A stretch of DNA of 64,000 nt from Rebecca billardiae RCC1528 (taxonomy: Eukaryota; Protista; Haptophyta): assembly GCA_965240325.2 (NCBI GenBank), contig OZ251224.1:682001-746000 (forward strand). Direction: 5' to 3'. Within the stretch, counting starts at the first letter, position 1; every line of letters starts with the position of its first letter. A program made the position numbers and the translations under genes. Under the pieces are notes generated by a model that made no database searches, had not been told where the DNA came from, and saw nothing but the letters and a program-made list of their open reading frames with translations. Positions 7,737 to 42,879 of this stretch are shown in pieces.

Positions 7737-9385
7737 ATGGGTGGTCTCCTCTCGACAGCTGTGGCGGGCGGTGGCAGGTACGTGGTGGAGCGCGGACGCT
7801 CGTGCCATGCGAGGGGCATGCCGGCCATCATCCAACGCGTCTATGCGTGCGCCTGACGCGTGCCTCCCTCCCCCCCCCCTCGCCCCTGCCCCTTCACGGC
7901 TGCCCGGCTCGGCGACCGCCCCGTGCGCAGCCTGGCGGGCTGCTTCGCGATGCGCGGCGTGCTCGCGCTCGTTGGCACGACGCTGGGCTCGTGCTTCGGA
8001 ACATGCTGCGCCAGCTGCGCGTGCAGCGCGTGCACGATGGCGTGCAAGGGCTCGGCCCAGGGCGCGCGCATCACATACCTGCTGCTCCTCGGCGCGGGCG
8101 TCGTGCTCGCACTCGTGCTCCGGTTCGCGCTCTCGCCGTCGATGGCGGCATGGCAGGGCGTGCAGCTCGTGGACGAGTGTGAGGGCGCCGTGGAGTGCAC
8201 AGGGAACGAGGCGGTGTACCGCGTCGCCGGCACGCTCTCCGCCTTCTTCCTCGCGCTCGCCGCCCTCTGCGCGTGCCCGGGCAACGTGGGCGCGTCGGCG
8301 CACCGCGGCTTCTGGGCGATCAAGCTCTTCGTGCTGAGCGCGGCGATCACGGGCTCGTTGTGGGTGCCGAACGGCGCGTTCGACGCGTTCGCCTCGGTCT
8401 CGCGCGTCGCGTCGGTGCTCTTCGTGCTGTACCAGGGCCTGCTGCTCATCGACTTCGCCTACATGTGGAACGCCAAGTGGGTGGGGCTGGACGAGGAGGC
8501 GGACGGCTTTGGCTGGCGCGCGGCCATCCTCGCCATCTGCGTGGCGCTGTTTGTGGCGAGCTTCACGGGGATCGGGCTGATGTACTCGCTGTACGCGGGC
8601 GAGGACTGCGGCTTCTCGAGCGCCATCCTCACCGTCACGCTGCTCTCCATCCTCCTCTTCACCGGGCTGGGCGTCTCGCCGCTCTCGCCGCACGGCGCGC
8701 TGCTGCCGTCCGCCATCATCGCCGCGGACTGCGTCTACCTCGCCTACTCGGCGCTCGCCTCCAACCCGATCGCCGCGTGCAACCCGTTCTCGGCGCGCGG
8801 CGACGACGAGACGACGGGCGGGCACGAGACGTTCCACCTCGTCGTCGGCCTGGCGATGGCGGGCGTGTCGATCGCGTGGAAGGCCAACTCGGCCGCGACG
8901 TCGGCACACCTCCTGCACGCGCCAGAAGCGCAGGTGCGCGCTCGCCTCGCGATGCGCGCGGGGCGCCGCGCCGCGCGCGCGCCGTGGCGCGACGCTGACG
9001 CGGGCGCGCGCCCGCGCGCGACGCGCGCGCGCAGGCAAGCACGCTCTTGCCGATCACGGTGAGCGGCGCGGCCGTGCAGACGAGCGAGGTGGCCGCCGCA
9101 AGCGAGGGCGACGGTAGCGCGGCGGCCGCGGCCGATGCGGACGAGGAGCCGCTCGAGTCGGACGCGGCCTTCTTCCACGTGATGATGGCGGTCTCGTGCA
9201 TGTACTTTGGCACCCTGCTCACGGACTGGGGCACCGCCTCGCCCGATCACGGCGACATCCGGCAGTACGACGTGAGCTGGGCGTCGGCGTGGGTCAAGGT
9301 GGGCACGCAGTGGTCGATTGTGGTCATGTATGTGTGGACGCTCATCGCGCCAGCGCTGTTCCCGGACCGTGACTTTGGCGCTTGA
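7737..9385 (+). CDS. SERINC: SERINC/TDE/TMS1 membrane protein; exons 7737-7777, 7931-8933, 9035-9385
   Basis: MG start, Cys-rich N-terminus, CTGNEAVYRV, HRGFWAIK, LLLIDFAYMWN, FFHVMM..SCMYFGTLLTDW, WVK and YVWTLIAPALFPDRDF. GT-AG introns 7778-7930 and 8934-9034 join the exons in frame. Confidence 0.9.
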
Positions 9386-9953
9386 CTCGTAACTGTACAT
9401 ATCACGGTTACGACGAGTCAGTCAGTCTGACAACTCCAAGGTGTACCCGCAGTCAGTCAGCGAGCTTAGCAGGGATGCCACCGTCGCTGATAATAAGCTG
9501 TCAGCCTGACAGGCCGCACTCCGCGGGGACGCGGCGCGGACCGCGCCCGGGGGCCGCACGGGCGGGCCACTCAACGTGGCTACTCCGTACTGCCGTCGGG
9601 TCTAGTCGGTCAGGCAGTCAGTGACTAGTGACACAGTGGGCTCCGGCGAACGGCGGCAAACCGTGAGCCCGGGCACTGCCTGTCCCCTCACTGACGACTT
9701 ATTTTGATGGCTTGATTAGGTCATCGTCACTCATTGATTACGCTTAATGCTCCTATTTACGGGTGACGGGTGTAGTCAGAATCAGATTGACTGATTATGG
9801 CTCGCTCCGCCAGCTTATTCCGAAATACCCCCTATGATCATAGTGCGACCGTTGGCCCATCAGGCTGACTGCGAGATTGAGTCATATTTCAGGGCTAGCT
9901 TCGTCTCTCTGCGATTCTGAGATGATTTTAAAAAGTACCCCTAATCCCTATAC

Positions 9954-10152
9954 CAGGGGCGTTCCCCGCACTGGTCCTACGCCAAATCGAACTGCCGCGT
10001 TCCTATTGAAATTGGCTTTCTCTATTTCAAGCGGGTAGTACATTTGATATTACGGCCCGCGCCAGTCCGGCCCGTACGGCCATGCCCCGGCCCCAGGGCC
10101 GACGGGGGGCATGCCGTTCGGAGCGTGAGTGGCAGGATCTGCCGGGAACGCC
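9954..10152 (+). mobile_element. Repeat family B, shorter copy (inverted relative to 13259-13619)
   Basis: 9951-10064 matches the reverse complement of ~13513-13622, and 10064-10152 matches the reverse complement of ~13263-13333. Ends are CAGGGGCGTTCCC...GGGAACGCC. Confidence 0.75.
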
Positions 10153-10565
10153 AGTGCCCAGTTGGTGCATACCCGCTGGGCCCCAGCCCGGTGCCGTCCA
10201 CTCGACCACGTCCCGCAACCCCGTGGGCCCTCGGACGGGCCGCGGGGCTAGTGAAAATGGCCTGGCTTCGTGCCAGAGCCCGCGGCAGGCCACTCCGGGG
10301 CCCGAGCGGCGAGCTAATGCGGCGCTGTGCCGCGCATCAGTACCTGAGACCAGAAATGGCAGTAGTGAGTAGAATTCAGAATAAGTTATTCACATCCGAA
10401 TACATTTCCCATAATAATCATCGTGACCCGGCTCAGTCACGATGGGCGCTGCCAGTACGAGTCGCCGTCTGGTCGCGCGCAGATCTCTCGGTCGGCGCGG
10501 CGGCCGCGGGGCGCGGCGGTGCCTCCTCAGTCATATGACACTGAGCCACCGGGGCGCGGCGCGGC

Positions 10566-10885
10566 CGCCCGCCGTCCGAGAAATCAGAATGCAGTCTTCA
10601 GGGCTCACGGCGCGGCGCTTGTCGGGCCTGGCCTCGCGCAGGGGCAACAAGCGCGCGAGTAGTGCGACCGTGCCCTGTCCACGTAGAGGGAGTAAGTCGA
10701 GTCACCAGAACTCGTCGTGCGTGATGATGACAGAATGTGTCCGGTCGAGCGGGACGCCCGCCGTCCAAGAAATGAGAATGCAGTCCTCCGGGCTCACGGC
10801 GCGGCGCCTGTCGGGCCTGGCCTCGCGCAGGGGCAACAAGCGCGCGAGTAGTGCGACCGTGTCCCGTGTCCATATGCAGGGAGTA
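10566..10885. repeat. Direct duplication of ~128 bp (10566-10694 and 10755-10885) downstream of the Myb gene
   Basis: Two near-identical copies of CGCCCGCCGTCC..AGAATGCAGTC..GGGCTCACGGCGCGGCGC..GGGGCAACAAGCGCGCGAGTAGTGCGACCGTG, 189 bp apart. Confidence 0.85.
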
Positions 10886-10972
10886 GAGAGCAGTGTCGTG
10901 GGTGGGGATGTCGTCGTTCGCCTCGCGCCAGCGGGCTTGCGCGCCGCCGCGCGACCCGTCAGTCCCGCGGCG

Positions 10973-12264
10973 CTACATGTGGCTGCTCTGCACGCCCCCT
11001 GCGCGCAGCTGCTGCTGCATGTAGAGCCGGTGCGCGAGCATGGCGAGCATCGCCTCGTCGCCGCCGCCCGCGCTCGAGACCGGCGCCGCAGACGACGGCA
11101 GCGCGGCGGGCTGTTTCCACACGCTCGCAGGTGCGCCCGCAACCTCGGCGTGCGCCTTGCTGGGCAGTCCGGCCAGCGAGGCCGCGCCGAGCGCCGGGTT
11201 GAATGACTGCGCCCCGAAGAGGTCGAGCATGTCGGGTGCGCGCGAGTTGAAGCCCGACATCCCGACGGGCGTGTCCATCTGCGGCAGGTCATGCAGCATG
11301 TGCAGCGCGCTCGGCGTCGTCTCGGGGACCGACGGGATGCTCGGCAGGTGCTGGGCGAGCAAGGGGTTGGCGCTGCTGGCCGTCTCCGCCCACCGCGGCA
11401 TGTCTGCTGCCAGCTGCGGCGCAGACTGCGCGGGCGCGGCGGTGCGCGGCGCGTCGAGCGCCACCTGCCGCATCTGCGTGAGCATCAGCTCGACGAGGCT
11501 GGCGCGGTACGCCGATTTCGTCGGCAGCGCGTCGACGAAGAGCATCTGGTTGACGAGCTGGTCGACAAAGTGCGAGCTGTGCTCGGCGCCCGACGCCTGC
11601 GCGAGCGCCTCGAGGGTGGAGCCGAGCGCCGGCGTGCTGGCCGCGGGCATCGCGGTGGCGGCGGGCGGCACGATGGGCATCGAGCCGAGGCCGAGGCCGA
11701 GGCCGGAGGGGAGGCTGCTCGCGCCGGACACCTCCGCGGGCGCCGGGATGGTGCGGAGGTGGATGGCGCGGTAGCGGTTCTTGATGGCGTGACTCGACCG
11801 TCCGGGCAGCAGGGGCTGGAGACGCGACCAGTGCTGGGCGGCGGCGGCGGAGGGCGAGCGGGCGGGCGTGGCGCGATGTGCACCGGCACGCGCGAGGGGC
11901 GAAAGGGACGTGAGCGCGCGCGCGCGCAGACGTGCTGTGGGCGGGCGCGGCGCTCGCACGAGCGAGCTGCACACACCTTGCCGATCGCAGCGACGCCGCG
12001 AAGGATGAGGGCATCCTCCTCGTCGGACCACGGAGCGCGGTTGAGGTCGGGGCTGAGCGCGGTCTGCCAACGCTCGCGGCACTGCGCGTGTGAGCGCGTG
12101 CCGTGCTGCTGCGACACGAGCGCCCACGCGTTGGTGCCGTGGCGCATGACGAGCGAGCGCAGGCGCTCGTCCTCCTCCGTCGACCACGTGCGGCGCTGGT
12201 GGCGCCGGCGGGGTGGCCGGTCGGAGACATGATCAGATACTCGGGGTGCGGGTGATGGCGCCAT
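10973..12264 (-). CDS. R2R3-Myb transcription factor; exons 12264-11977, 11833-10973
   Basis: WSTEEDERL..HGTNAW..RSHAQCRERW..LSPDLNRAPWSDEED..GK|HWSRL..LLPGRSSHAIKNRY. GT-AG intron 11976-11834 restores repeat R3. Confidence 0.9.
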
Positions 12265-13258
12265 GGGCGCGCGGTCGGCTGAGTTGGTGGTGGCGGGCGC
12301 AGGAGTTCCTGGCGCACGCGAGTGTCGAGACCACTCTCGGTGGGCAGCGGTGGAGAGCTCTGTGCGAGTCGCGGTTGATCGCGGTTGAGAATCGAAGGCA
12401 GGCAAAAGGTCGCATCAAGCTGGCCGGCGGAAGCGCGTAATATTTGGTGATGCAGACCGGTGTGCCCTCTTTTACTCTTTTACTCTGCCTACTCATACTC
12501 AGCGAAGACGCCGGAAGAAATCCACACTGCGGACGAAACCCATTTGGATAGCGTTTGACCGCCCTACCCGCGCTGGCCATCTCCTTGCGCTGAGATCCAC
12601 GAGAAAATGGAACACGGTTCGGGGCGGGAGCCCCGTCATACCGCTACTGGGCTTACTTGAATCTTACTTGCAAAGTAAATGACTACTGGGCCGTGCAAGC
12701 CACACCATACTTCCCGCCTCGAAAGGAATCCAGGCTCCGGAAGGCACGATTTCTGGGATCCGCGAAACGTCAGTATTGGCGGGTTGCACGAGAGCGTGCG
12801 TACAGGCCTGATGAACCCGAGACCGGCTCAATCTCGCTTCTCTGCCACACGGCCTGGGCCATCATTTATGATAAATCATCACTCATCGATTAGAGGTGCG
12901 CGGCCTTTGTACAGTTTACTATGTTTTAACGTGCAGTACGACTCCGCGGCCCTTTGGCTTTCGGTAGTCGCTCATGATGATCAGGAAGGCGCAAGTCAAC
13001 AACTACTGGTATTCGGCAGTACTTGCAACCGCCCTTGGTACTTGCATCCCGTTGGGACGACCACCCGCTTGCAAGCTTCTCTGATAATGTTGCCAAAACT
13101 TCGCAAGCCAGTAGCACCGAGTTGAAAGTATAGTACTAGTAACCGCTCGAACCGTTTCATTTCCATGGCGGTCGATTTTCTGGCGTAAATCGAGTCGCGC
13201 CATAAATACTGGGGTGCCTTCCGAACTGTTGCCTGAGCTGTGTGCGTCTCTTATTCTT

Positions 13259-31076: not shown

Positions 31077-31192
31077 CAGTTTACTAATACTCATAGCAGT
31101 AGTATAACTAGTAGTATATAAGAACAAGAGACGCGCACAGCTCAGGCAGGCGAGATAATGACGCCCGCCAAGTGTCACCGCCCATGAAGCCG
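31077..31192 (-). repeat. Repeat family C copy (inverted relative to 37200-37279) with a 31-bp AT-rich insert
   Basis: 31120-31192 is the reverse complement of 37200-37270. The TTAGTAAACTG continuation resumes at 31087-31077. Confidence 0.8.
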
Positions 31193-31853
31193 CCCGGCTG
31201 CGATGGTACAGTACGCTATAGCTTAAAGTCACGGAGTCGGAGAGTCTTGAAGTCTAACTCGCGCGGAGCAGCCCGCCCGGAAACTCGATCCCGGAGGGCG
31301 GCCGGTCACGCGCGGACGCGAGAGTAACGAGACGGTCGGCGGCGGCGCGCCGGTGGCGCCCTCACTCACGGCTCACTCCTGACGACCTCAGAGTCAGACG
31401 TTACGAGTGACGCGGCGCGGTCGCGGCGCAGCCGCCTGTCCGCCGAGACTCGGTCACTAGCTCTACCGGACTGGCAACGGCTGCGCCGGATCGCCCCCGC
31501 GCGGCCCCAGGACTCGGCAGTCGACGGCCGCGGGCCGCGGGCCCGTGACGCGGAGACGGTGGGCACCGCATCATGCCGCTGCCAGCGGTCCGACGACCGG
31601 CCGCCGCGGGCGGACCGGGTACTGCGGGCCCGACTGGAGTCAGGACCGCAGGTTCAGCCTTCAGGTACTACTTAGGTATACCTACGGTACGGTCGTAGTA
31701 GTAACTACTAACCGCCAGTAGCCCGGTCTCATCAGTGATGATGTCAGACTGCGCCGCGACAGCGCGGCCGCGGTCTCGCCGAGCCAGTGACGGTTACAGC
31801 GCGTGGAGTTACACCTTCTTTCTTAGCCGCCGTGCCGGGCAGTGCCAGTGAGC

Positions 31854-33002
31854 TTACTGAGCAGCGCATACAGGTGCCGGTTGCCAGGCGGCCTCACGCG
31901 GCTCGCACGTACGAAGCGCAGGTAGGCTTTGGGTCGAATCTGCAGCGCCTTGCGGGCCCGAGTGCATGCGAGGAGCCTTGCTGCTCAGCCTGGCAGAGGC
32001 GGGGGTGCTTGACGGCGGCTCCCGCCATGCGCTCGACGTCGACTCGGGCTGGACCCGAGGACAGCTTGCCATCAAGGATGGCACGCAGAAGGTAGGCCTT
32101 CTGCGTGTGGCGGCCTTGATTGCGTATAGCTGACGCTGCTCGTCGAGAAACGCCTTGCACGCCGGGTCCTTGAGCGCCTCGATGAGGTAGCCGTACTCCA
32201 CATCGTACCGCTCAAAGTCCCTGGCGTGGAACGTGCCAAACAGGAAGCCCGGCAGCCCGGTGAGCCGCTGGAAGATCTGCCGCTTCTTCTCGAGGTCGCA
32301 GCCAAACTGGCGGTGGAAATGCGGCGCGTCGATCCAGACGAATTGCCGCGCCATCTCACGCTCGATGTGCTGGTAGTCTGACGGCGTAAACTTCTTCATC
32401 AGCCCGGGCAGCAGCGCGACCTCCTCGTCATGCATGTGCGGCAGCATGATCTCCTGCACGTGCAGCACCTCGGCGAGGCAGTCGTCGACGGTCGTACTCA
32501 CGCCAAAGTACTCAAAGGTAGCGCTCGCAGACGCGATCGTGCGGCTGAGCCGCCGATGATCGCTCGAGATCTTGAGCGGGATGCGCATGCGGTGGCACAG
32601 AATCGGGAAGATGATCTCCTCCTCCTGATCCTGGTGAAGCGTGATGTTGCTGACGACGCGCCGCCACCACATCCGGATGCCTTCGACCTCCCACGGGTGC
32701 ACGGTACCCGCCGCACGCATGCGCTCAAGCGCTCGAACCGTGTCTTCCAGATCCAGCGCGATCGTCCGGTGCGCGAGCACCCACAGATGTTCACGGAGCT
32801 CGGGGCACTTCTCCGCGGACGCACTGCGCTCGCTCGGTGCGCAGTGGTTGCGTCGCTCAAACAGCGGGTGGCCGTCGACCACAGGCTCGAGAGCTGCTCG
32901 CGAGTGCTCTGACGACGGCTGCCGCAGTATCGCCCACATCCCCGTCGCCGAGGGAGGTGTGAGACATGTGTTCGTAGTGTCGTTGGTGGATGGCTTAGCC
33001 AT
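31854..33002 (-). CDS. Hemerythrin-like (HHE cation-binding) domain protein
   Basis: WVLAHRTI..DL, LHQDQEEEIIFP, SDHRRL and PHMHDEE..LLP give the H / HxxxE / H / HxxxE pattern. Intronless ORF of 382 aa. Confidence 0.75.
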   Translation of the reverse strand: MAKPSTNDTTNTCLTPPSATGMWAILRQPSSEHSRAALEPVVDGHPLFERRNHCAPSERSASAEKCPELREHLWVLAHRTIALDLEDTVRALERMRAAGTVHPWEVEGIRMWWRRVVSNITLHQDQEEEIIFPILCHRMRIPLKISSDHRRLSRTIASASATFEYFGVSTTVDDCLAEVLHVQEIMLPHMHDEEVALLPGLMKKFTPSDYQHIEREMARQFVWIDAPHFHRQFGCDLEKKRQIFQRLTGLPGFLFGTFHARDFERYDVEYGYLIEALKDPACKAFLDEQRQLYAIKAATRRRPTFCVPSLMASCPRVQPESTSSAWREPPSSTPASARLSSKAPRMHSGPQGAADSTQSLPALRTCEPREAAWQPAPVCAAQ

Positions 33003-34021
33003 CTTTGCTGGTTTCGTCGGACGTGTTCCCCAGTCAGGTTCACGCTATCAGCGCGGGAAAAATCTGGGAACAAGTGGAATGGAAGAGCGGTCGTTGATTA
33101 CGGTATTTGACGATGGTCCGGAACCGGAATTACTCTGATTCTACTATCCATTGCACGCATTGAACAATCGAACCGGTATTTTGGTCTTGGCTCTTTTATA
33201 CGGTACGGCCAGATGGTGGCGGGTACTTCGATGGTGGCTGGCCAGGTAGTGCGGCACGTCCGTGCCTCTGGACGGGCATTGAGCCGTGGCGAGGTCGCCA
33301 AATCGCGCGGCGTGGTCCCAGAGAAGGCTGCTACTACCCCTGACCAGCTTGCTAGCCATGCCGGTCGTTGATCACCCCGCCGTTGACAGGCGCGCACACG
33401 CCACGCGTAATCGCATGGCAGCGACGTGTCGGACGGCGGTCGCACGACTACCGCGTAGCCAACATTGATCGTCAGACTCACGACTTGTGGGGTCAGGCAG
33501 AACATTGATAGGTCTGCACCCTCGCCTGGCATGCCCCAGAGGTCAACACAGCCATCAGAAGGGTGATCCTGCCCACTACTTGCCCATCCTTCCCATGCCC
33601 GCAGTCTCGCGCGTGCCGGTCACACGATGACGTGGACGTGGACGTGAGAGTGGTCGAAAAGTCGGAAGGGAAGCTGTCACTCACGCACGCGCGCTCGTAC
33701 GGCGACGCCGACCGGCGAGTGCAACGCCCCCCTGTCCCGGACGTTGCACTCGCGCCTTGGATCGCGGTGGGACGGCCATTCACGCCCGCCATGGCTTCCC
33801 TTCCGAAGTCCCCAACTTCACCTGGACCCCCTGTAGGCAGATCAAGGTAGCTCTGGAGGTGCCTCCCCGGTCCGGGCCGGGAGCTCCTGACCAGCGAGCG
33901 GCCCATAATCCACATCCAAATGTTTCAAGATTGTTGGCGTAGTGCCCCGTGCGCGCCGTGTCTGGATGTCTGCTCGGACGATTGCTCGTCCGAGACCTAC
34001 TCTGAAAGCGCACGCCAGCAG

Positions 34022-36361
34022 TCACTCCCACGGCTGCGATGAGCCCTCTGGCAGCATCAGAGGCACGGGCGTGTAGCGCGGCTCCCAGTCGCCGAGGCCA
34101 AGCTGCCCGTGAGCGTTGGCGCCAAACATCAGCACGAGGTCTTCTGCACCGCTGCGGCGACCCTCTTCCTCCGCCCCCGCTGCAGCCTCGTCATCCGCGC
34201 GGTGCGGTCGCAGCACGGCGGAATGGTCCCAGCCCACCGCGACTGCCACCACGCGGGCGCAGCCGGCGCCCGGTTCGCCTGGGCAGGCGGGCCGGAGTGG
34301 TGCCCCGCGCGCTGCTTCGCCGCAGTCGACTGCAACGGGCGCGAGTGCAGGCTCCGCCGAGCCACCCCCGAGCTTTCCCTGCTCACCATCGCCGAACGCA
34401 AAGACGCGCCCGTCCGCGCTCGCGAGGAGGCTGTGGAACGTGCCCGCGGCGCACGCGCGCAGCAGCACACCTTCTGGCATGCCGAGCATACGCATCGTGC
34501 GCTGCTTCGTCGCGCCCGTGCTGGCGCCGGCCGACGCGCCGCCCGCGCCTCCGAGCCGCCCCGGGCAGCGGCCGGAGAAGCCGCACGCGAATGCCCGGCC
34601 GCGCGCGGTCACGCACACCGTGTGGTAGTTCCCCGCCGCGGCGGCGATCACGCGCTCGGTGTCCAGCGGCGCGGAGCACACGCACACCGGCCGCAGCTCG
34701 TCCGCTTCGCCGCCGTGGCCGAGCTGGCCGTTGCCGCCAAAGCCCCACGCGTACAGCCGGCCGTCGACGCCCACGGCGACCGAGTGCGAGTCGCTCGCGC
34801 TCACGGCGCGGCACCCGGCGAGAAGCGCGCTCGCGCCGCCCCGGTCGGCGGCGGGAAGGCCCCTGGCGTCCCCGAGCACGCGCCTCGGCTCCGAGCGGCG
34901 CAGCGACCGATCGCCGTGCCCCAGCTGGCCGAGGTCGCCGAGGCCCCAGCTGAACACGCCGCCGTCGTCTACGCAGAGGGCGAGGCTGTGATGCGAGGCG
35001 GCGAGCGCGCACACGTGCACGTGGCGCAGCGCGCTCACCACTGTTGGCGTGGCCACGCGCTGCGCCTCGTCGAGCGCGTCGTCTGCGCCGAGGCCGAGCT
35101 GGCCGTGCTGGTTGTCGCCCCACGCGAACGTGACGCCCCGATCGCTCGCACACAGCGAGTGCAAAGTGCCCGCGGCCACGGCCACGACGCGCACGCGCGA
35201 GAGCGCGGGCACGCAGCGCGGCCGCACGCCGTCCGCGAGCCCGCCGTCGCCCATCCCGAGCTGGCCGCGCCGGCCCGAGCCGAACGCGACCAGAGCGCCG
35301 TCCGCGCCGCGCGCGAGGAGCGTGTGCGCGCCCACGCCGCGCATGCAGTCCGACACGGCGCCGTCCGAGCCGCCACCCGCGGACAGGCGGCGCGCGTGCG
35401 CGGCCCACGGCTCGAAGCGCTCCGCCCAGCGCTCGCGCCAGAGCAGCTCCTGCACGCAGCCGCGCGTGCCCGGCGCGGGCGGACAGCCTGGGTTGCTCCG
35501 CGCGAGCCTCGGCGAGCGCGCGCGCAGCCGCAGCGCGTGCTCCACCGGCGAGGCGAGCGCGCGCGCCGCGCACAGCAGCCGAGCGACGTCAGCAGCGCTC
35601 GGCGCGCTGGCGACGATGCGCGCGAGCGCGTCGAGCGGGAGGCCGAGCAGGCGCAGCGGCTGTTGATCCGGCGCGTCGGTCGGCGCCTGCCCCGCAGGCT
35701 GCGCGCCGGCCTCGTGCCACCACGCCGCCGCGTTCGGCACCGCGAGCAGCGGCGCGACGACGCTCCACCAGCCCACGAGCAGCGCGCCCTCCGCACCGGG
35801 CGCACCGCCGAGCAGGAGGCGCAGGAGCTCCGGCGTGTTGCACGGGTGCAGGCCGACGCACGGCGAGCCGAGGACGGGGTGCTCCAGCTGGGACAGGTGG
35901 AATGGCGACTCGCGCACCAGCGCGCCGTCCTCGCTCACGTGGAGCCACACGTCTTCGAGGCCGAGCGGTGCGCCGTCCGCGTGCGTGCCGCGGATCAGCA
36001 GCGTGGGCACGGCGTACGTGCGGTGGAGGGCGATGTGGAGCTCGAGGCTGTGGCCGGGGGCCTGAGGCGGCGCGTAAGCGCGCGAATGCTCGTCCTCCGC
36101 CTCAGCCGGGAGCTCGTCCTCCGCCTCGAATGCGCACGACGAGTCGTCGGCGTGCGCGCGCGACGCGCACCGCGCACACGCCCCGCGCGCAGGCTCGCTG
36201 GGAAACGGCGCCGTGCGCAGGAAGCCCTCCCCGTGGCTACCAGCCGCGTCGGTGCCTGCGACCCACGACCATGCCAGCGGCGAGCGCGTCGAGCGCACCA
36301 CGAATGCGCGCGCCTCGCGCGCGAACGCCTCTGAGCCCAGGGCGGGCCAGCTGTCCGCCAT
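34022..36361 (-). CDS. ATG10: ATG10 E2-like domain fused to an F-box-like motif and RCC1 repeats
   Basis: aa ~8-210 match ATG10 (HIALHRTYAVPTL..DGAPL.LEDVW..SQLEHPVLG..LHPCNT..WWSVVAP). aa ~238-275 read LLGLPLDALARIV..DVARLLCAARAL. aa ~345-770 are RCC1 blades (HSL..AWGDNQHGQLG, SWGLGDLGQLGHG, AWGFGGNGQLGHG). Confidence 0.88.
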   Translation of the reverse strand: MADSWPALGSEAFAREARAFVVRSTRSPLAWSWVAGTDAAGSHGEGFLRTAPFPSEPARGACARCASRAHADDSSCAFEAEDELPAEAEDEHSRAYAPPQAPGHSLELHIALHRTYAVPTLLIRGTHADGAPLGLEDVWLHVSEDGALVRESPFHLSQLEHPVLGSPCVGLHPCNTPELLRLLLGGAPGAEGALLVGWWSVVAPLLAVPNAAAWWHEAGAQPAGQAPTDAPDQQPLRLLGLPLDALARIVASAPSAADVARLLCAARALASPVEHALRLRARSPRLARSNPGCPPAPGTRGCVQELLWRERWAERFEPWAAHARRLSAGGGSDGAVSDCMRGVGAHTLLARGADGALVAFGSGRRGQLGMGDGGLADGVRPRCVPALSRVRVVAVAAGTLHSLCASDRGVTFAWGDNQHGQLGLGADDALDEAQRVATPTVVSALRHVHVCALAASHHSLALCVDDGGVFSWGLGDLGQLGHGDRSLRRSEPRRVLGDARGLPAADRGGASALLAGCRAVSASDSHSVAVGVDGRLYAWGFGGNGQLGHGGEADELRPVCVCSAPLDTERVIAAAAGNYHTVCVTARGRAFACGFSGRCPGRLGGAGGASAGASTGATKQRTMRMLGMPEGVLLRACAAGTFHSLLASADGRVFAFGDGEQGKLGGGSAEPALAPVAVDCGEAARGAPLRPACPGEPGAGCARVVAVAVGWDHSAVLRPHRADDEAAAGAEEEGRRSGAEDLVLMFGANAHGQLGLGDWEPRYTPVPLMLPEGSSQPWE

Positions 36362-37199
36362 CGCTGGCCGGAACTACACCCCCGGGGGTGTAGCCAAGGA
36401 GGTGCCAGCAGCAGCGCCGGCGCTCAAGCACCACCCGTCGCGCCGCGTGGCGACCCCCCTGCGGTGGGGCGTGGCCCGCCGGCCAAACGGAGCCGCCCGG
36501 ATTCCGATACCCTGAAGCAGCCTCTCTGGCCTGGCGCCCCCTCTCCTGACCAGCCCAGACCCCCGACGCCTGCGGGGCCGGACGCCCCGCCCCTACGCAA
36601 GTCTGCCAGGCTGTGCCAGAGCCGCACGCGCGGCGCAGGCATGACTGCAGCTCCACACCAGCACAACGACGCTTCGCGCGCACCCGGCGCGCCGACACAG
36701 CCTGCCCGGGAGAAGCCAGCAGGGGCTGACCTTGGGCAGCAGCCATACATGCAGGCCAGCATGAGCGGTGGGGTGGCATCAGTGCCGGCCCCGGCCCGCA
36801 AACGCAAACAGCCGGACGCCCCGGCCCACACAGCTGATGCGCCAGCAAACCCTGCTCCGGGCCACAGAACCCTGCCGCCGGCTTTGAGGCCGACTCGCCA
36901 CACTGGGGCACATATCACCTGAGGGCCAGGCCTTCTGTGTGATAAGCTACCCCAGTCATGCCGCTTGATACACACCTTCCCCAACCGACAGTGGGGCTCC
37001 ACGTTCCTTACTACATCCTCATCCTGTCGGCGCGCTGTTGCATCGGCGCCCAGTCGGCGAGTTCGGACGACGACGTTTTGTGGACGACGGTGGGGCGAGG
37101 ACGACGGGCGCTGGCGCGCCGCGAGGCGGCCGCAGCCCTCATCCAGGCCTCGCAGGCGGACGGCTGAACGAATTTTTCCGGCGGCGCTACCATCGGCGA

Positions 37200-37280
37200 C
37201 GGCTTCATGGGCGGTGACAGTTGGCGGGCGTCAATCTCGCCTGCCTGAGCTGTGTGCGTCTCTTATTCTTAGTAAACTGT
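37200..37280 (+). repeat. Repeat family C copy with uninterrupted site
   Basis: CGGCTTCATGGGCGGTGACAGTTGGCGGGCGTCAATCTCGCCTGCCTGAGCTGTGTGCGTCTCTTATTCTTAGTAAACTGT. Its 3' part is shared with 13230-13258 and 13620-13628. Confidence 0.8.
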
Positions 37281-37998
37281 ACAGTACCGTGAGCTTTCCA
37301 CCGAAGAAAGCTTTTACAGGTGGATACGGGCTAACTGGACACAGGGGCTATCTGGACACTCAGCGGGCGGCGGGCCTCGTGGCGAGGGCTCGTGGGCGAA
37401 CGAGCACGAGCGCCCACTGGCGGGTCGCCACGACGGCGCACGATGTTCGCTGAACTCACCTGGTCGTGAGACGTCGTCTGCGCACGCGCCAGGTCGCGCT
37501 TCTCGCCGCCTTCGCCTTGTTTCGTGAGTCCCGCGCACAAGGGCGAACGCCAGCGTTTCAAGCCGCAAGGCGCGTGCGCGGACTCAGGAAGGGCGGACTC
37601 CGAGGCAAGGCGCGGTTGCGCTGGCGTGGGTAGGTCCAAGAGCAACCGTCCGAGCCGCTGCACACGCTTTTCCTCCGCGCGCGCGTCTCTGAGCTCGATT
37701 CCCATGCCTCAGCCAGTGCCAGGGGCTAATTGGACAGTGCCATTGCGGCCGCCACGCGCGGAGACGGGCCCGCAGCGCAGAAAGCGCGCTGCGGCGGAAC
37801 TCCGGGAACCCCCTGAAGTCCGTCCCTGGCGCCCCTTCGACCCCAATGCTCCCAGGGAGGCCTCCGCGTGAGTTGGGTCGGCCACTGTCCAGATCACCCG
37901 TATCCACCTGTAATGTTTTCATGCAAGGACATCGCCTGCCGGCTGCCGTTGCCCTTTGAAGCTTCGGCCCCGTGGCACCTCCATCGTCATCCGCCGCG

Positions 37999-39447
37999 AT
38001 GATGGGCGTCGTCGCGACGGTGCGCGTCGCGATGGCGTGCAGCCTCTTGTTCACAGCCGCAGCCGGTGCGCGGCCGAGCATTGCACTGCCGCGTGCTTCT
38101 TCTCGCGTGACGACGCCGCGGGCGCGGCCCATGCTCAGCAGCGCGGCAGCAGCGGCAGGCGACCAGCCTCGCCCCGTGCGGCTGCCGTACCGGTCGCTCG
38201 GCGCCCTGTGGGCGGTGTACGTCACAAACCAGTGGTCGCGGGCGCTGCTGGCGCACACTGTGAGCTTCCCCGGCGACGGCCAGGCGGACCCTAACTCCTT
38301 CATCAACGCCGCCCTCGGCTTCGACGAGGAAGCCTACGCGGGCCTGCTCGCCGCGGTGACGACCACCTATGTACTCGCGTCCCTCCCTGCGGGCTTCGTG
38401 GCGGACAAGACGAGCCGACGCGTCAAGGTGCTCGCCGGCGTATGCGTCGCGTGGGGCATCGCCATGCTCATGCACGCGCTCGCGCCCTCTCTCGCCGTCC
38501 TCACCGGCGCGCGGCTGCTGCTCGGCTTGGCGGCTGCGTGCTGCTCGCCGCTGTGCAACTCGCTGATCGCGGACAGCTGCCCCCCGCAGCGGCGGGGCGA
38601 GGCGTTCAGCGTGTACGTGAGCGGGGTGTACGTCGGCGCGGCGCTGGCGACGCTCTCCGGCTCCAGCGCCGCCCTCCTCGCCCCCCTCGGCCTCCCGCTG
38701 CGCCTCGGCTGGCGCGCGAGTTACGTGGGCGCGGGGTGCGCCTCTCTGCTCGCGGCCGCGCTCGCGCTCACGCTGGTGAGAGAGCCGCCGCGAGAGCTCG
38801 ACCTGCGCGCGCGCGCGCGCGCGGCCCCGCTTGGGCTGCGCGGCGCGCTGCTCCCGATTCGCCGCGTGCTCGCCAGCCGCACCGCCGCGCTCTGCCTCGC
38901 CGCGTTCTCGGTGCGCTTTGTCGCCGGCTTCTCGATCCAGTCGTGGATGCCCGCGCTGTGCAAGGCGCGCTTCCCGGGCATGGAGGGCGCGTTCGCGTCC
39001 GTGTACGCGGTGACGGTGCTGTCGGGCGGGCTGCTCGGCTCGTTGTCGGGCGGGCTCCTCTCGGACGTGGTCTCGCGCCGATCGAGCAGGCCCAACGCCA
39101 AAGTCCTCGTCCCGATGATCGGCTCTGCGATCGCGGCGCCGCTGTTCGCGCTGGCGATCGCGCAGCACACGCTCGGCGGCATGATGGCGGCCTTCTTCGT
39201 CCACCTTGTCTTCGCGGAGTGCTGGTTCGGGCCGACGATTGCGACGCTGCTCGGCTCGCTGCCGAGCGACCTGCGCGGGACCGCACAGGGGATGGCCAAC
39301 TTCGCGCAATTCTTCGCCGGCCTTGCTCAGGCGGCGATCGCGCCGCTCGCGCGCACATACGGCATCGCCGCGGTCGTCTCAGCGGTTGTGCCGCTCGCCT
39401 GCCTGGGGAGCACGCTGCTCTTCCTCGCCGTGTACCTGACGGTGTAG
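37999..39447 (+). CDS. MFS transporter (Spinster-like) with signal+transit-like leader
   Basis: Motif A variant AGFVADKTSRRVK; RLLLGLA..SPL..SLIAD..PPQRRG; GWR; GGLLSD; about 12 TM segments. Leader MMGVVATVRVAMACSLLFTAAAG followed by an R/S/P-rich stretch. Confidence 0.88.
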   Translation: MMGVVATVRVAMACSLLFTAAAGARPSIALPRASSRVTTPRARPMLSSAAAAAGDQPRPVRLPYRSLGALWAVYVTNQWSRALLAHTVSFPGDGQADPNSFINAALGFDEEAYAGLLAAVTTTYVLASLPAGFVADKTSRRVKVLAGVCVAWGIAMLMHALAPSLAVLTGARLLLGLAAACCSPLCNSLIADSCPPQRRGEAFSVYVSGVYVGAALATLSGSSAALLAPLGLPLRLGWRASYVGAGCASLLAAALALTLVREPPRELDLRARARAAPLGLRGALLPIRRVLASRTAALCLAAFSVRFVAGFSIQSWMPALCKARFPGMEGAFASVYAVTVLSGGLLGSLSGGLLSDVVSRRSSRPNAKVLVPMIGSAIAAPLFALAIAQHTLGGMMAAFFVHLVFAECWFGPTIATLLGSLPSDLRGTAQGMANFAQFFAGLAQAAIAPLARTYGIAAVVSAVVPLACLGSTLLFLAVYLTV

Positions 39448-39734: not shown

Positions 39735-41643
39735 TCACTCGATGGTCCTGCCGTCCTCGCTGATACCAAGCCTGCGCATGTCCTCGAGATCCTTCTCGCG
39801 CCACTGCCGCTCTGTCTCCGAGCTCACCTGTGCGCGGCGCAGCGAACGGCACGCGCAGTGCGCGGGGCGCAGCGAGACTGAGAGCGTGGCAGCGCACGCT
39901 GCCAGTGAGTGCCGCTTGGCAGCATCGATGGAGCGAAGCGCAGGGCAACCGGCGACGGCCGCCGCCCTTCCTCACCTCGACGTACTCCACGTCATCCTCC
40001 TTGCGAGGCGGCGCTTGTGGAGTGAGCTTGCCGTGCTCGCGCGCGTGCTTTGTGGAGAAGTGCGCAATGTGCTGCCGCGCCTCCGCCTCCGCCTTGTCGC
40101 GCTCCATCTTGGGCTTGGTCTGCGCGCGCCAGGCCCCGCGCGGCGCGATGCACCCGCGCGCTCCTCAGCCCGCGCAGCGTGGCGGCACGCGCGCACCGTG
40201 CGCGGTGCAGTGCGCGCGCACACGCATGGAGGCATGGGGACATGCATGGGGGCGCACCTGGTTGTAAGCCGTCTTGCCCCCTCCCCGCACGAGGAAGGTC
40301 TTCTGCTTGGCGGCGCGCCGCCGTCGCTCCTCCTCCTCGGCACGGCGCGCCTCCTCGGCTGCTCGTCGGGCCTCGTCCTCCGCGCGGATCCGCTCAGCCT
40401 CGGCCGCTTCCTCCGCACGGCGCCGAGCCTCCTCCTCTGCGAGCCGCCTCGCCTCCTCCTCCGCTGCCCTGCGCGCCGCCTCCTCCTCCGCCGCCCTGCG
40501 CGCCGCCTCCTCCTCCGCCGCCCTGCGCGCCGCCTCCTCCTCCGCCGCCCTGCGCGCCGCCTCCTCCTCCGCCGCCCTGCGCGCCGCCTCCTCCTCCGCC
40601 GCCCTGCGCGCCGCCTCCTCCTCCGCCGCCCTGCGCGCCGCCTCCTCCTCCGCTTGACGGCGCGCCTCCTCCTCCTCCGCGCGCCGGCGGGCCTCCTCCT
40701 CTGCCGCCCGGCGCGCCGCCTCCGCCTCCTCTGCAAGTCTGCGCGCCTCCTCCTCTGCCGCCCTGCGTGCCGCCTCCTCCTCCGCACGCCGCCGCGCCTC
40801 CTCCTCCGCGGCTCGGCGAGCGGCTTCCGCCTCCTCGGCGAGCCTACGCGCCTCCTCCTCGGCGCGTCGCCTCGCCTCCTCCTCCGCGCGCTGCCTCTCC
40901 AGCTCCTCCGCACGCTTCCGGGCCTCCTCCTCCGCCGCCGCCCTGCGTGCTGCCTCCTCCTCCGCGCGCTTGCGCGCCTCCTCCTCCTCCGCCGCCCTGC
41001 GTGCTGCCTCCTCCTCCGCGCGCCGCCGCGCCTCCTCCTCCTCCGCTTGACGGCGCGCCTCCTCCTCCTCCGCTTGACGGCGCGCCTCTTCACGCAGACG
41101 GCGCGCCTCGTCCTCCGCTGCCTTCCTCTGCCGCTCCGCCTCCTCCTCCTCGCGGCGAATCCGCTCCTGGTCGATGCAGTAGGCGCACTTCTCAGCGTGC
41201 TTGGAGTAGATCTCCGAGGCGAGCGCGTTGAACGTGTCGAACACATCCTCACCATCGCCGGTTTTTGGGTGCGGCAGCTCGGGCGCGTCTGGCAGCGGCA
41301 CGCGCTTCTTGGGCGGCAGCTTGTCGAGGCCCCACGCGTGCTTCTTGACGCACGTCTTCTGGTGGATTGCGAGCGATGCGGTCCCGTACTGCCGGTTGCA
41401 CATGAAGCACGTGATCTGGAGCGGCGTGTGCCCGAACGAGCGCGGCGACTTCTGAGGTCCGTCTTGCTGGGGCGCGCGGAGCGAGCTCGGCGAGGTGCGA
41501 GGACCGCCCCCTTGAGCAGGTGCGCGGAGCGAGCTTGGCGATGTCCGCGGGCCACTACCTTGGCTCGGTGCCCGCAGCGCACTCGGCGACGCGCTTGGTG
41601 ATCGGGCCTGGTTGCCCCCGCTGCGCGGTGGGCGCAACTCCAT
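39735..41643 (-). CDS. C2HC-type zinc finger protein (ZNF474/475-like finger) with an E/R-rich single-alpha-helix region; exons 41643-40258, 40119-39976, 39827-39735
   Basis: TCFMCNRQYGTASLAIHQKTCVKK..LPPKKRVPLP followed by (EEEAARRAA)n. Two GT-AG introns give an open frame to TGA at 39737-39735. Confidence 0.75.
40440..41090. repeat. Coding 27-bp tandem repeat (EEEAARRAA) and variants
   Basis: CTCCTCCTCCGCCGCCCTGCGCGCCGC repeated perfectly about 6 times at ~40480-40650, degenerate on either side. Confidence 0.9.
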
Positions 41644-41751
41644 CGTACACTCGCCGGGGCGCCAACTCCGCTGCACGCCGAGCCGTGGCGGCTTCTCGAG
41701 GTTCGGCGTCCGAGACGACTCGGCGCGCGCGCTGATCGCACTCGGCTCGTG

Positions 41752-42879
41752 ATGTCGAGCGAGCGGCCGTCGCCGCTCGCACGCAAGCTGCCGCGCTTTG
41801 CGCTGGTCAACTTGATCGTGTGCACCGTCGCGGCGGCCTCTCACGGCATTGGCACCCTCGCGGGCGACGGCTTTGCGAGCCTTTGGCTCAGCTCGTGCAT
41901 CAGATGCGCGCTCAGCGTGGGCGTGATCACATGGCTCACGCGGCGCGCGGCGCCGATCGGCCCGCGTCGTGATGGCCCGACACGCGCCGAAGCCCGCATC
42001 ATCTGGCTGAAGGTGGCGCTCCTGTCCGCCCCTTCAGACGCGCTCGCGCTCACGCTGGCGGCCCGCCTGGCGTTGGGCGGCGGCCGGTCAGCGACTCCCG
42101 CTCTCCTCATGCGCCCGGCGGTGTTCGTGCTGCAGTCGTTCGTCTGGGAGCTGGTGTTCGACTTTTTCCACTACTGGGTCCATCGCGCCTGCCACAGCTC
42201 GCCGCTGGCCTACCGGCTGGTGCACAAGGCGCACCACCGGTACGCGGCGCCATCGCCGCTCACGACGTTTGCGCACGCGCCGCTCGACGTGCTCGCGTCC
42301 AACCTCGTGCCGGCGCTGCTCGCGTTCTGCACGCTCGCGCTGATGGGCGCGCCCATCGTCGGCGTGTCCGAGCGCCAGCTCCTCTTCGCCTACAAGTCCT
42401 ACGTCGAGGTCGCCGGTCACGCGGGCGTGGACGCGCGGCCGCGCTCGTTCCCGCAGTTCACGTGGCTGCCTTCCGCCATCCCGGCGCGCGGCGTGACGGG
42501 CAGGGGCGGGATCACGGCGCACACGCGGGAGCACGACTGGCATCACGCGGTGCTCCGGTGCAACTTCTCTAAGCGCTTCCGCGTGTGGGACATCCTGTTT
42601 GGCACGTACGAGGAGCCGCCACCGCTGGCAGCGGCATGCGAGCCGGCGGCGCCGTGCGACAGCGGCGTGCGCCCACTCAAGGCTGCTGGGGCGGCGGCTG
42701 GGCCTGAGCCGCGGCCGTCCTCGGCGGCTGGCGGCGCGCGCATGGCGGCCGACGGGCCGGCTAGCGCGACTGAGAGAGAGGTCGCGCTCGCAAAGGCGGC
42801 GCCTCGCTCGCGGCTCCACGCACCATCGGCCGGCCGAGCACTCCGGCACCGCGTGTGCGAAGTGAATGGTTTTGGTTGA
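41752..42879 (+). CDS. Fatty acid hydroxylase / sterol desaturase superfamily protein
   Basis: His boxes FDFFHYWVHRACH, VHKAHH, GHAG and HDWHH, then NFSKRFRVWDILFGT. Confidence 0.88.
   Translation: MSSERPSPLARKLPRFALVNLIVCTVAAASHGIGTLAGDGFASLWLSSCIRCALSVGVITWLTRRAAPIGPRRDGPTRAEARIIWLKVALLSAPSDALALTLAARLALGGGRSATPALLMRPAVFVLQSFVWELVFDFFHYWVHRACHSSPLAYRLVHKAHHRYAAPSPLTTFAHAPLDVLASNLVPALLAFCTLALMGAPIVGVSERQLLFAYKSYVEVAGHAGVDARPRSFPQFTWLPSAIPARGVTGRGGITAHTREHDWHHAVLRCNFSKRFRVWDILFGTYEEPPPLAAACEPAAPCDSGVRPLKAAGAAAGPEPRPSSAAGGARMAADGPASATEREVALAKAAPRSRLHAPSAGRALRHRVCEVNGFG

What the first reader, a model, noticed from the sequence alone, without database searches (positions are those of the whole stretch)
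34022..36361. ATG10 autophagy E2 fused in one exon to an F-box-like motif and an RCC1 beta-propeller
Seen: one uninterrupted 779-codon ORF. aa ~8-210 follow ATG10 end to end, including the catalytic HPC (Cys174, codon 35842-35840). Next comes an F-box-like LLGLPLDALARIV segment, then ~7 RCC1 blades. There is no Met between aa 1 and ~aa 340, so the F-box/RCC1 part has no separate start. Established: ATG10 is normally a stand-alone ~200-aa E2-like enzyme that conjugates ATG12 to ATG5; F-box plus propeller is the layout of SCF substrate receptors. Inference: this protein could dock an ATG12-charged E2 on a Skp1/cullin scaffold, aim ATG12 conjugation at new substrates, or couple ATG10 turnover to SCF. 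I know of no described ATG10 with this architecture, but I cannot search.
Basis: partly seen in the sequence, partly recalled or inferred. Interest (0 to 1): 0.85.

Follow-up and report, generated by a model that had tools for sequence, protein, structure and literature searches.

The report
ATG10 fused to an F-box–RCC1 protein
One uninterrupted gene in this GC-rich algal genome joins the autophagy enzyme ATG10 to an F-box and a seven-bladed RCC1 propeller; a distantly related organism has the same join, which physically links the ATG12-conjugation machinery to a ubiquitin-ligase-type adaptor, and I found no published description of it.

Summary
Window 34022-36361 (-) is one 779-codon ORF. It encodes an ATG10-type E2 (aa 13-205, HPC Cys174), a flexible linker of about 25 aa, a diverged F-box (aa ~237-282), a helical connector and a complete seven-bladed RCC1 propeller (aa ~340-779). 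The fusion is not a chance ORF or a merged gene model. Two gene-sized contigs from two sequencing runs, probably RNA, cover the ORF without interruption. An exhaustive search of 1.84 billion proteins found a second protein, P0124 (739 aa), that is colinear end to end (36% identity, E=1e-93) and has the same three parts; its F-box passes Pfam thresholds. Both genes sit at the same orthologous locus, next to a divergent MFS transporter gene. Two related organisms carry an ordinary stand-alone ATG10 at that locus. The C-terminal halves of the two fusions are sisters within a family of free-standing F-box–RCC1 proteins, so one fusion event is the simplest history. The tree places the lineage beside prymnesiophyte haptophytes, which suggests a pavlovophyte. 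I found no paper describing this architecture. Function is inferred: most likely the cell's working ATG10 carrying a SKP1-docking, ligand-binding tail. It is a new variant of known kinds, of moderately high interest.

The parts
37276..37343 (-). Upstream 5'-UTR segment present in contig L001 (bases 1-68)
   Evidence: blastn of L001 against the window, 100% identity
36378..37275 (-). 898-nt stretch missing from L001: a 5'-UTR intron with non-canonical borders, or an insertion polymorphism. L002 runs 19 nt into it.
   Evidence: no GT-AG in any register; a 20-nt palindrome at its 3' border and a ~95-nt dispersed repeat at its 5' border
36362..36377 (-). 5'-UTR immediately upstream of the start codon; there is no upstream AUG in L001's 82-nt leader
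34022..36361 (-). Complete coding sequence, 779 codons plus stop, with no intron
35747..36325 (-). ATG10-type autophagy E2 domain (aa 13-205)
   Evidence: Pfam PF03987 E=8e-21; AlphaFold core pLDDT ~90; Foldseek hits only ATG3/Atg10 structures; clade with named ATG10
36062..36199 (-). Acidic, low-confidence loop inside the E2 domain (aa ~55-100)
   Evidence: pLDDT 51-62; variable in alignment A3
35840..35842 (-). Catalytic cysteine codon (Cys174 in LHPCNT)
   Evidence: invariant in A3, A4 and A6
35654..35716 (-). Pro/Ala/Gln-rich flexible linker (aa 216-236); 13 aa longer than in P0124
   Evidence: alignment A2; pLDDT <50 at aa 229-238
35516..35653 (-). Diverged F-box (aa 237-282): LP motif and three helices
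   Evidence: HHalign 96.3% against F-box profile A5; A5 hits only F-box proteins in the PDB; helices at aa 243-251, 256-265 and 267-282 with pLDDT 78-89
35345..35515 (-). Conserved post-F-box connector (SPVEHALRLR... and LLWRERW helix), shared with stand-alone F-box–RCC1 relatives
   Evidence: alignments A1 and A5
34025..35344 (-). Seven-bladed RCC1-like beta-propeller (aa 340-779) with Gly/Ala-rich loop insertions
   Evidence: Pfam; PDB sequence hits; AlphaFold pLDDT >90 and Foldseek to UVR8/HERC2/RCC1
33869..34021 (-). 3'-UTR as far as both contigs agree with the window
38056..39441 (+). Divergently oriented MFS transporter gene; the synteny marker that identifies this as the orthologous ATG10 locus
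   Evidence: tblastn with the MFS neighbours of L005, L006 and L007: 44-48% identity, E<=1e-84

Best explanation
This is a genuine gene, probably transcribed as one unit, that sits at the organism's orthologous ATG10 locus. An ancestral stand-alone ATG10 lost its stop codon and was joined in frame to a gene of the free-standing F-box–RCC1 family. Shown here: the N-terminal domain keeps the autophagy E2 fold and its catalytic Cys174; a ~25-aa disordered linker leads to a diverged but homologous three-helix F-box, a conserved helical connector and an intact seven-bladed propeller; a second, deeply diverged organism has the same arrangement. Inferred: the protein still serves as the cell's ATG10. 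ATG7 would charge Cys174 with ATG12, which is then passed to ATG5. The tail would dock the enzyme on SKP1, with or without cullin, through the F-box, and bind a partner on the propeller face. This would tie ATG12-conjugating activity to an SCF-type platform, either to control ATG10 abundance or to place it beside a particular target or compartment.
For: Domains. The join is real: the contigs cover the junction; the neighbouring gene also lies on its own gene-sized contig in both runs; GC3 is uniform. Orthologue P0124 is colinear over aa 13-777, 36% identity, E=1e-93, with HPC conserved. Its F-box passes Pfam cut-offs when scanned alone. The F-box begins ~10 aa after the ATG10 fold in P0124, leaving no room for a separate gene start. 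Synteny: MFS next to ATG10 in the window, L005, L006 and L007. ATG10 identity: a 100/97 clade with stand-alone 216-237-aa proteins, sister to a clade containing E. huxleyi proteins that UniRef names ATG10. F-box homology. Single origin: the C-terminal halves are sisters, SH-aLRT 99, and fusion monophyly is not rejected in the ATG10 tree, AU p=0.40. Structure. A known F-box+RCC1 protein, FBXO24, binds SKP1/CUL1/RBX1 (PMC10932545).
Against: No biochemical step was tested. This protein's own F-box misses every Pfam F-box model. Relative to the aligned F-box consensus it has Ala at two core Leu positions and Leu at the conserved Trp position (alignments), so SKP1 binding may be weakened or lost. 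RNA origin of the contigs is probable, not proven: the one 'splice' has non-canonical borders and contig ends coincide with a repeat. Whether the genome has a second ATG10 is unknown. The ATG10 tree as drawn places stand-alone ATG10s inside the fusion group (98/80), which requires either a later loss or two gains. Foldseek ranks ATG3 structures above fungal Atg10.
Confidence: 0.55

Rival explanations
1. Passenger fusion. The join is real, but the two halves do not cooperate. ATG10 works as usual, the propeller tail acts independently or merely localises the protein, and the F-box in this lineage is decaying and no longer binds SKP1.
For: This protein has no Pfam F-box hit. Core F-box positions are replaced by Ala and the conserved Trp position by Leu. 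Two related lineages manage with stand-alone ATG10 at the same locus. Other apparently unrelated C-terminal additions to ATG10 exist, such as aldose epimerase, SpoU and DUF4864.
Against: The F-box and its connector are kept at about the same identity as the enzymatic domains across a divergence where the neighbouring MFS gene is only 47% identical. P0124's F-box still passes Pfam thresholds. AlphaFold predicts the three helices with pLDDT 78-89.
Confidence: 0.27
2. One gene, two proteins. Internal initiation, an internal promoter or proteolytic cleavage in the linker releases a normal ATG10 and a separate F-box/RCC1 protein.
For: The linker is disordered and Pro/Ala-rich. P0124 has a Met (M224) about 24 aa before its F-box.
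Against: The window's protein has no Met between aa 1 and 340, so AUG initiation cannot yield an F-box-containing product. Both contigs are continuous across the junction. In P0124 the F-box follows the ATG10 fold by only ~10 aa.
Confidence: 0.1
3. Artefact. Two adjacent genes are read as one because stops are rare at 76% GC, or because of an assembly error.
For: Long spurious ORFs are common in this window; for example, a 741-aa ORF lies on the opposite strand of the same region.
Against: Independent contigs from two runs are 100% identical to the window. An orthologue from another organism keeps the frame through a linker of different length. There is no space for a promoter or start. GC3 periodicity is continuous.
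Confidence: 0.02
4. The N-terminal domain is an ATG3-type (ATG8-conjugating) enzyme rather than an ATG10-type enzyme.
For: PDB sequence and fold searches rank ATG3 chains above fungal Atg10. Pfam PF03987 covers both families.
Against: The best relatives are 200-250-aa proteins that are colinear over their full length, including E. huxleyi proteins that UniRef names ATG10. The longer ATG3-type hits (330-395 aa) match only the catalytic half and score lower. Solved Atg10 structures are from yeasts, whose Atg10 is short and diverged.
Confidence: 0.05

Closest known systems
Stand-alone ATG10 (E2-like enzyme for ATG12–ATG5 conjugation), e.g. Emiliania huxleyi XP_005758664.1 and the syntenic stand-alone proteins P0122 and P0123
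   Same: Same domain (PF03987), the same HPC catalytic cysteine, full-length colinearity over ~210 aa, and the same chromosomal neighbour (a divergent MFS gene) as P0122 and P0123.
   Different: Carries a ~560-aa C-terminal extension (F-box, connector, RCC1 propeller). The algal autophagy review I read (PMC11449223) mentions no ATG10 fusion.
Free-standing F-box–RCC1 proteins of marine protists (P0029, P0011, P0084, P0106, P0065) and animal FBXO24
   Same: An N-terminal F-box followed by a seven-bladed RCC1-like propeller. The protist relatives also share the post-F-box SPVE.ALR / WLER connector. FBXO24 co-precipitates with SKP1, CUL1 and RBX1 (PMC10932545).
   Different: Those proteins begin at or just before the F-box with their own start codon (P0029). 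Here the F-box is internal, preceded by an E2-like enzyme, and more diverged. No specific relationship to FBXO24 beyond the shared architecture was shown.
P0124 (Logan SRR30664517 contig, L005)
   Same: The same three-part architecture at the same locus; colinear, 36% identity overall and 43% in the propeller half.
   Different: Shorter linker (13 aa fewer), an F-box closer to consensus (it passes Pfam), lower GC, and a different downstream neighbour.
E2/E3 hybrid ubiquitin enzymes (UBE2O, BIRC6) – analogy only, from general knowledge
   Same: A conjugating-enzyme domain built into the same polypeptide as substrate-binding or ligase-type modules.
   Different: Those carry canonical UBC domains for ubiquitin and no F-box. 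Here the E2 is the non-canonical autophagy type for ATG12. No homology is implied or was tested.

Membership tests
ATG10 (autophagy E2-like enzyme) | Match to the Autophagy_act_C (PF03987) profile above the gathering score | tested here: met
   75.3 bits against a cut-off of 24.4, aa 13-205 covering profile positions 2-185 of 193
ATG10 (autophagy E2-like enzyme) | Catalytic cysteine in the HPC motif | tested here: met
   LHPC(174)NT aligns with the active-site Cys of ATG3 structures and with HPC in all close relatives
ATG10 (autophagy E2-like enzyme) | ATG10-type rather than ATG3-type: a compact ~200-aa core, colinear with proteins named ATG10 | tested here: met
   Top hits are 200-250 aa and match over their full length. 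The clade is sister to one containing E. huxleyi 'Ubiquitin-like-conjugating enzyme ATG10'. Caveat: the PDB fold search ranks ATG3 above yeast Atg10.
ATG10 (autophagy E2-like enzyme) | Autophagy E2 fold | tested here: met
   AlphaFold core pLDDT ~90. The only significant Foldseek hits are ATG3 (E ~1e-6, TM 0.5-0.65 on the target) and Atg10 (E ~5e-3).
ATG10 (autophagy E2-like enzyme) | Accepts ATG12 from ATG7 and conjugates it to ATG5 | not testable with these tools
   Requires biochemistry or genetic complementation
F-box domain | Match to Pfam F-box or F-box-like at the gathering score | tested here: not met
   No hit for this protein even at E<=10. The orthologue P0124 passes when its segment is scanned alone: 25.5 against 24.3 and 23.6 against 20.5.
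F-box domain | Homology to demonstrable F-boxes | tested here: met
   aa 232-314 against profile A5 of stand-alone relatives: 96.3% probability, E=1.5e-9, 49% identity. A5 itself retrieves only F-box proteins from the PDB, with the Skp2 F-box at E=2e-6.
F-box domain | LP motif, hydrophobic core and conserved Trp of the ~40-aa three-helix motif | tested here: inconclusive
   LP is present and three helices are predicted (pLDDT 78-89). Two core Leu positions are Ala, and the Trp position is Leu in both fusion proteins.
F-box domain | Binds SKP1 | not testable with these tools
   No multimer prediction or SKP1 sequence of this organism was available
RCC1-like domain (seven-bladed propeller) | RCC1 repeat profile matches and a complete seven-blade fold | tested here: met
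   PF25390 276.8 bits, PF00415 x6. Model pLDDT >90. TM 0.87-0.91 on UVR8 and 0.84-0.86 on HERC2 RLDs.
RCC1-like domain (seven-bladed propeller) | Ran-GEF activity or chromatin binding (RCC1 proper) | not tested
   Nothing suggests orthology to RCC1 itself; the closest relatives are F-box–RCC1 proteins
SCF substrate receptor | F-box placed N-terminal to a protein-interaction domain | tested here: met
   The F-box at aa 237-282 precedes the propeller at aa 340-779
SCF substrate receptor | Assembles with SKP1–CUL1–RBX1 and directs ubiquitination of a bound substrate | not testable with these tools
   Experimental question

The most novel reading that the evidence does not exclude
The fusion is a self-contained targeting machine for a ubiquitin-like modifier other than ubiquitin. 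The propeller selects substrates, the built-in ATG10 attaches ATG12 to them, and the F-box anchors or regulates the enzyme on SKP1/cullin. That would be a natural 'E2 plus substrate receptor' for ATG12ylation beyond ATG5. By the Rosetta-stone argument, it would also predict that free-standing F-box–RCC1 proteins cooperate with ATG10 in other protists.
Probability: 0.1. Interest if true: 0.9.

Novelty: new variant of a known kind. Interest (0 to 1): 0.62.

Why it matters
ATG10 is treated as a small, stand-alone core autophagy enzyme with essentially one job, making ATG12–ATG5. Cross-talk between autophagy and cullin-RING ligases is known only as separate proteins acting on one another. Here an ATG10 is covalently joined to an F-box substrate-receptor module, and the join is kept in two deeply diverged organisms. 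That gives a concrete, testable physical link between the two systems. It points to a specific candidate partner family, the F-box–RCC1 proteins, to test for a role in autophagy in other eukaryotes. It also offers a natural experiment, since fusion and stand-alone versions occur at the same locus in related lineages, on how conjugating enzymes acquire targeting domains.

Tried and rejected
Word-index searches for other fusions and for ATG10 relatives returned almost nothing because the E2 domain is so diverged; only the exhaustive phmmer search was informative. Two JGI metagenome scans (one search failed for lack of conserved columns) found only stand-alone ATG10 loci. Other long ATG10 hits (P0133, P0138, P0155, P0214, P0257) carry unrelated C-terminal domains. 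P0138 and P0155 show no F-box by HHalign or Pfam, so they are not further instances. PDB sequence and profile searches could not separate ATG10 from ATG3. Rfam found nothing in the window. Searching papers for the run and assembly accessions found nothing, so the organism is only inferred. I tried to read L001's 5' discontinuity as a canonical intron and could not: no register gives GT-AG, GC-AG or AT-AC. tblastn found no second ATG10 or F-box–RCC1 copy in the window, and no F-box–RCC1 remnant downstream of the stand-alone ATG10s in L006, L007 or L010.
Full report
OBSERVATION. At 76% GC, long ORFs arise by chance; the opposite strand of the same region carries a 741-aa ORF. So the ORF alone proves nothing. 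From its composition, the chance of 779 stop-free codons is about 6e-5, and the other two frames of this strand have 9 and 5 stops. GC at third codon positions is 0.88-0.93 and at second positions 0.58-0.65 in each of the three segments, linker included. Pfam finds Autophagy_act_C at aa 13-205 (E=8e-21) and RCC1 / RCC1-like domain at aa ~340-770 (E=4e-82), but no F-box. The HPC motif puts the cysteine at residue 174 (codon 35840-35842).

IS THE JOIN REAL? Three independent lines say yes.

First, the exact 779-aa product is encoded on two contigs of about 2.5 kb from two different sequencing runs (ERR14847148 and ERR14847151). Both are 100% identical to the window across the whole ORF and its short flanks. 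One of them (L001) joins window 37343-37276 directly to 36377, skipping 898 nt upstream of the start codon. The neighbouring gene (31854-33002) likewise sits on its own 2.1-kb contig in both runs, and the 640-nt intergenic stretch is covered by neither. This pattern fits RNA-seq assemblies, so the ORF is probably transcribed as one unit. I rate this as probable rather than proven, because the skipped stretch has no canonical splice borders and contig ends coincide with a short dispersed repeat.

Second, an exhaustive phmmer search with aa 1-340 against 1.84 billion representative proteins found one other protein that matches both the E2 and the F-box linker: P0124, 739 aa. Pfam gives it Autophagy_act_C (46-229), F-box-like/F-box (248-278) and RCC1 repeats. 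BLASTP aligns it colinearly with the window's protein from aa 13 to 777 (36% identity, E=1e-93), with HPC conserved. It lies on a 6.3-kb multi-gene genomic contig from an unrelated run (SRR30664517), again as one uninterrupted ORF. The linker there is 13 residues shorter, and the F-box starts about 10 residues after the last ATG10 element. That leaves no room for a separate promoter or start.

Third, synteny. In P0124's contig a divergently transcribed MFS transporter gene lies just upstream. The same is true of the two closest stand-alone ATG10 genes, P0122 (237 aa) and P0123 (216 aa), on their contigs. It is also true of the window, where the MFS orthologue is at 38056-39441 (+), 44-48% identical. 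So this gene occupies the orthologous ATG10 locus. Two of four sampled lineages carry the extended gene and two the ordinary one.

THE THREE PARTS. E2 domain: AlphaFold2 with a 42-sequence alignment predicts the core at pLDDT about 90, with a disordered acidic loop at aa ~55-100. The only significant Foldseek hits in the PDB are ATG3 (E about 1e-6) and Atg10 (E about 5e-3) structures. ATG3 ranks first there and in sequence searches, but I still assign the domain to ATG10, for the following reasons. The best relatives are 200-250-aa proteins colinear over their whole length. The tree puts this protein in a 100/97 clade with the syntenic stand-alone proteins. That clade is sister (100/98) to one containing a Prymnesium protein and E. 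huxleyi proteins that UniRef names 'Ubiquitin-like-conjugating enzyme ATG10'. The longer ATG3-type hits match only the catalytic half.

F-box: the window's own segment gets no Pfam hit even at E<=10. However, the C-terminal 555 aa retrieve a family of free-standing proteins that combine Pfam F-box-like with RCC1 (P0029, P0011, P0084, P0054, P0089, P0093, P0114). Their F-box aligns directly onto LLGLPLDALARIV..., followed by a shared SPVEHALRLR / LxWLER connector. A profile built only from those stand-alone proteins retrieves only F-box proteins from the PDB (Skp2 F-box E=2e-6, then MAX2, FBXL17, TIR1, FBXW7, FBXO22...). It matches aa 232-314 of the window's protein at 96.3% HHalign probability, E=1.5e-9, and P0124 at 86.9%. 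P0124's segment scanned alone passes both Pfam gathering scores. With the deeper alignment, AlphaFold predicts three helices (aa 243-251, 256-265, 267-282) at pLDDT 78-89. So it is a homologous F-box, but a worn one. LP is kept, two core Leu positions are Ala, and the usually conserved Trp is Leu in both fusion proteins. Whether it still binds SKP1 cannot be decided here.

Propeller: pLDDT above 90. It superposes on complete seven-bladed RCC1-like domains (UVR8 TM 0.87-0.91, HERC2 RLDs 0.84-0.86, RCC1 0.75).

HISTORY. In a tree of the F-box–RCC1 halves the two fusion proteins are sisters (SH-aLRT 99). They lie within a loose group of F-box-bearing RCC1 proteins from marine samples, one of them on a giant-virus-like contig. 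In the ATG10 tree the topology is (window,(P0124,(P0122,P0123))) with 98/80 support, but holding the two fusions together costs only 1.7 log-likelihood units (AU p=0.40). The simplest account is one fusion event in the common ancestor or in a sub-lineage of this clade, possibly followed by loss of the tail in the P0122/P0123 lineage. P0029, a stand-alone relative, has its own start 150 bp from a divergent Isy1 gene and no ATG10 upstream. That shows the free-standing state of the donor family.

The clade's position beside prymnesiophytes, the 64-70% GC of all four loci, their compact intron-poor layout, and the 73% GC streamlined genome reported for Diacronema lutheri (PMC8379373) together suggest a pavlovophyte haptophyte. 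This is inference only.

HOW IT LIKELY WORKS. Shown: an intact catalytic E2 domain at the orthologous ATG10 locus, a flexible linker, a retained F-box, a conserved connector and a complete propeller, all held at similar identity (about 35-45%) across a divergence where the neighbouring transporter is 47% identical.

Inferred from established knowledge of the families: ATG7 charges ATG10's cysteine with ATG12 for transfer to ATG5. F-boxes dock on SKP1, and the C-terminal domain of an F-box protein binds a substrate. FBXO24, an animal F-box+RCC1 protein, co-precipitates SKP1, CUL1 and RBX1 (PMC10932545).

I therefore favour (0.55) a bifunctional protein: the working ATG10 of the cell, tethered by its tail to SKP1 (with or without cullin) and to a propeller ligand. 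The consequence would be either regulated turnover of ATG10 or placement of ATG12-conjugating activity at a particular site.

The main rival (0.27) is a passenger fusion with a decaying F-box. Smaller rivals are separate products from one gene (0.10), an ATG3-type enzyme (0.05) and artefact (0.02).

KNOWN OR NEW. The full-text search returned only three general papers that mention ATG10, F-box and RCC1 together, and none is about such a protein. A 2024 review of algal autophagy lists ATG10 among the core Ubl-conjugation components and mentions no fusion (PMC11449223). Both instances come from unannotated assemblies. All three domains are well known, and so is the F-box–RCC1 pairing. What is new is their combination with ATG10, hence 'new variant of a known kind'.

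Limits: only 150 of the 447 hits could be inspected. Eukaryotic genome collections could not be searched by DNA. The rest of this genome is unseen.

Noticed in passing
window 36378-37275 (and 37276-37343): Contig L001 joins 37276 directly to 36377, but the skipped 898 nt has no canonical splice borders in any register (best reading GT...GT, with a 2-nt ambiguity). A perfect 20-nt palindrome, CTACACCCCCGGGGGTGTAG, spans its 3' border at 36376-36395. It could be a non-canonical 5'-UTR intron or an insertion polymorphism.
   Followed up: partly
window 37188-37272 (+), 31119-31208 (-), 13227-13258 (+): A ~95-nt dispersed element (core GCCTGCCTGAGCTGTGYGCGTCTCTT; 3 copies against 0 expected). One copy abuts the 5' border of the skipped stretch. 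The neighbouring gene's contigs L013 and L014 end inside another copy. No Rfam match. It may be a 3'-end element or a small mobile element.
   Followed up: partly
window 33869 / L001 and L002 3' ends: Both contigs carry the same 8 nt (TCCCTTGG) after window 33869, where the genome reads GGGGAGGC. This could be a 3'-UTR splice, a polymorphism or an assembly tip.
   Followed up: no
window 31854-33002 (-): The downstream neighbour is a 382-aa single-exon gene with a weak, sub-threshold hemerythrin HHE match (23.4 against 25.3 bits). It is found on its own 2.1-kb contig in both runs.
   Followed up: partly
window 40452-41088: A 27-nt tandem repeat of 24 copies (CCTCCTCCTCCGCCGGCCTGCGCGCCT) lies inside long ORFs on both strands with no Pfam match. 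The region has strong AT and GC skew (-0.40 and -0.16).
   Followed up: no
window 41749-42879 (+): An ORF with a fatty-acid hydroxylase domain (PF04116, E=6e-22).
   Followed up: no
L004 (ENA ERZ19571628 scaffold_102), 8366-11692: The F-box–RCC1 relative P0054 and a second RCC1 gene sit on a 32-kb, 50% GC contig that also encodes a Pox_VLTF3-like factor. This looks like a giant virus carrying the same F-box–RCC1 family.
   Followed up: no
proteins P0257, P0133, P0138, P0214: Other long proteins combine an ATG10 domain with aldose 1-epimerase, a SpoU methylase fragment, DUF4864 or collagen repeats. They may be real fusions or merged gene models. P0138 has an LPxEL-like string after its E2 domain but no F-box by profile.
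   Followed up: partly
L005, L006, L007 and window 38056-39441: The divergent MFS transporter / ATG10 gene pair is conserved across four deeply diverged organisms (MFS 44-48% identical), while downstream neighbours differ in every case.
   Followed up: yes
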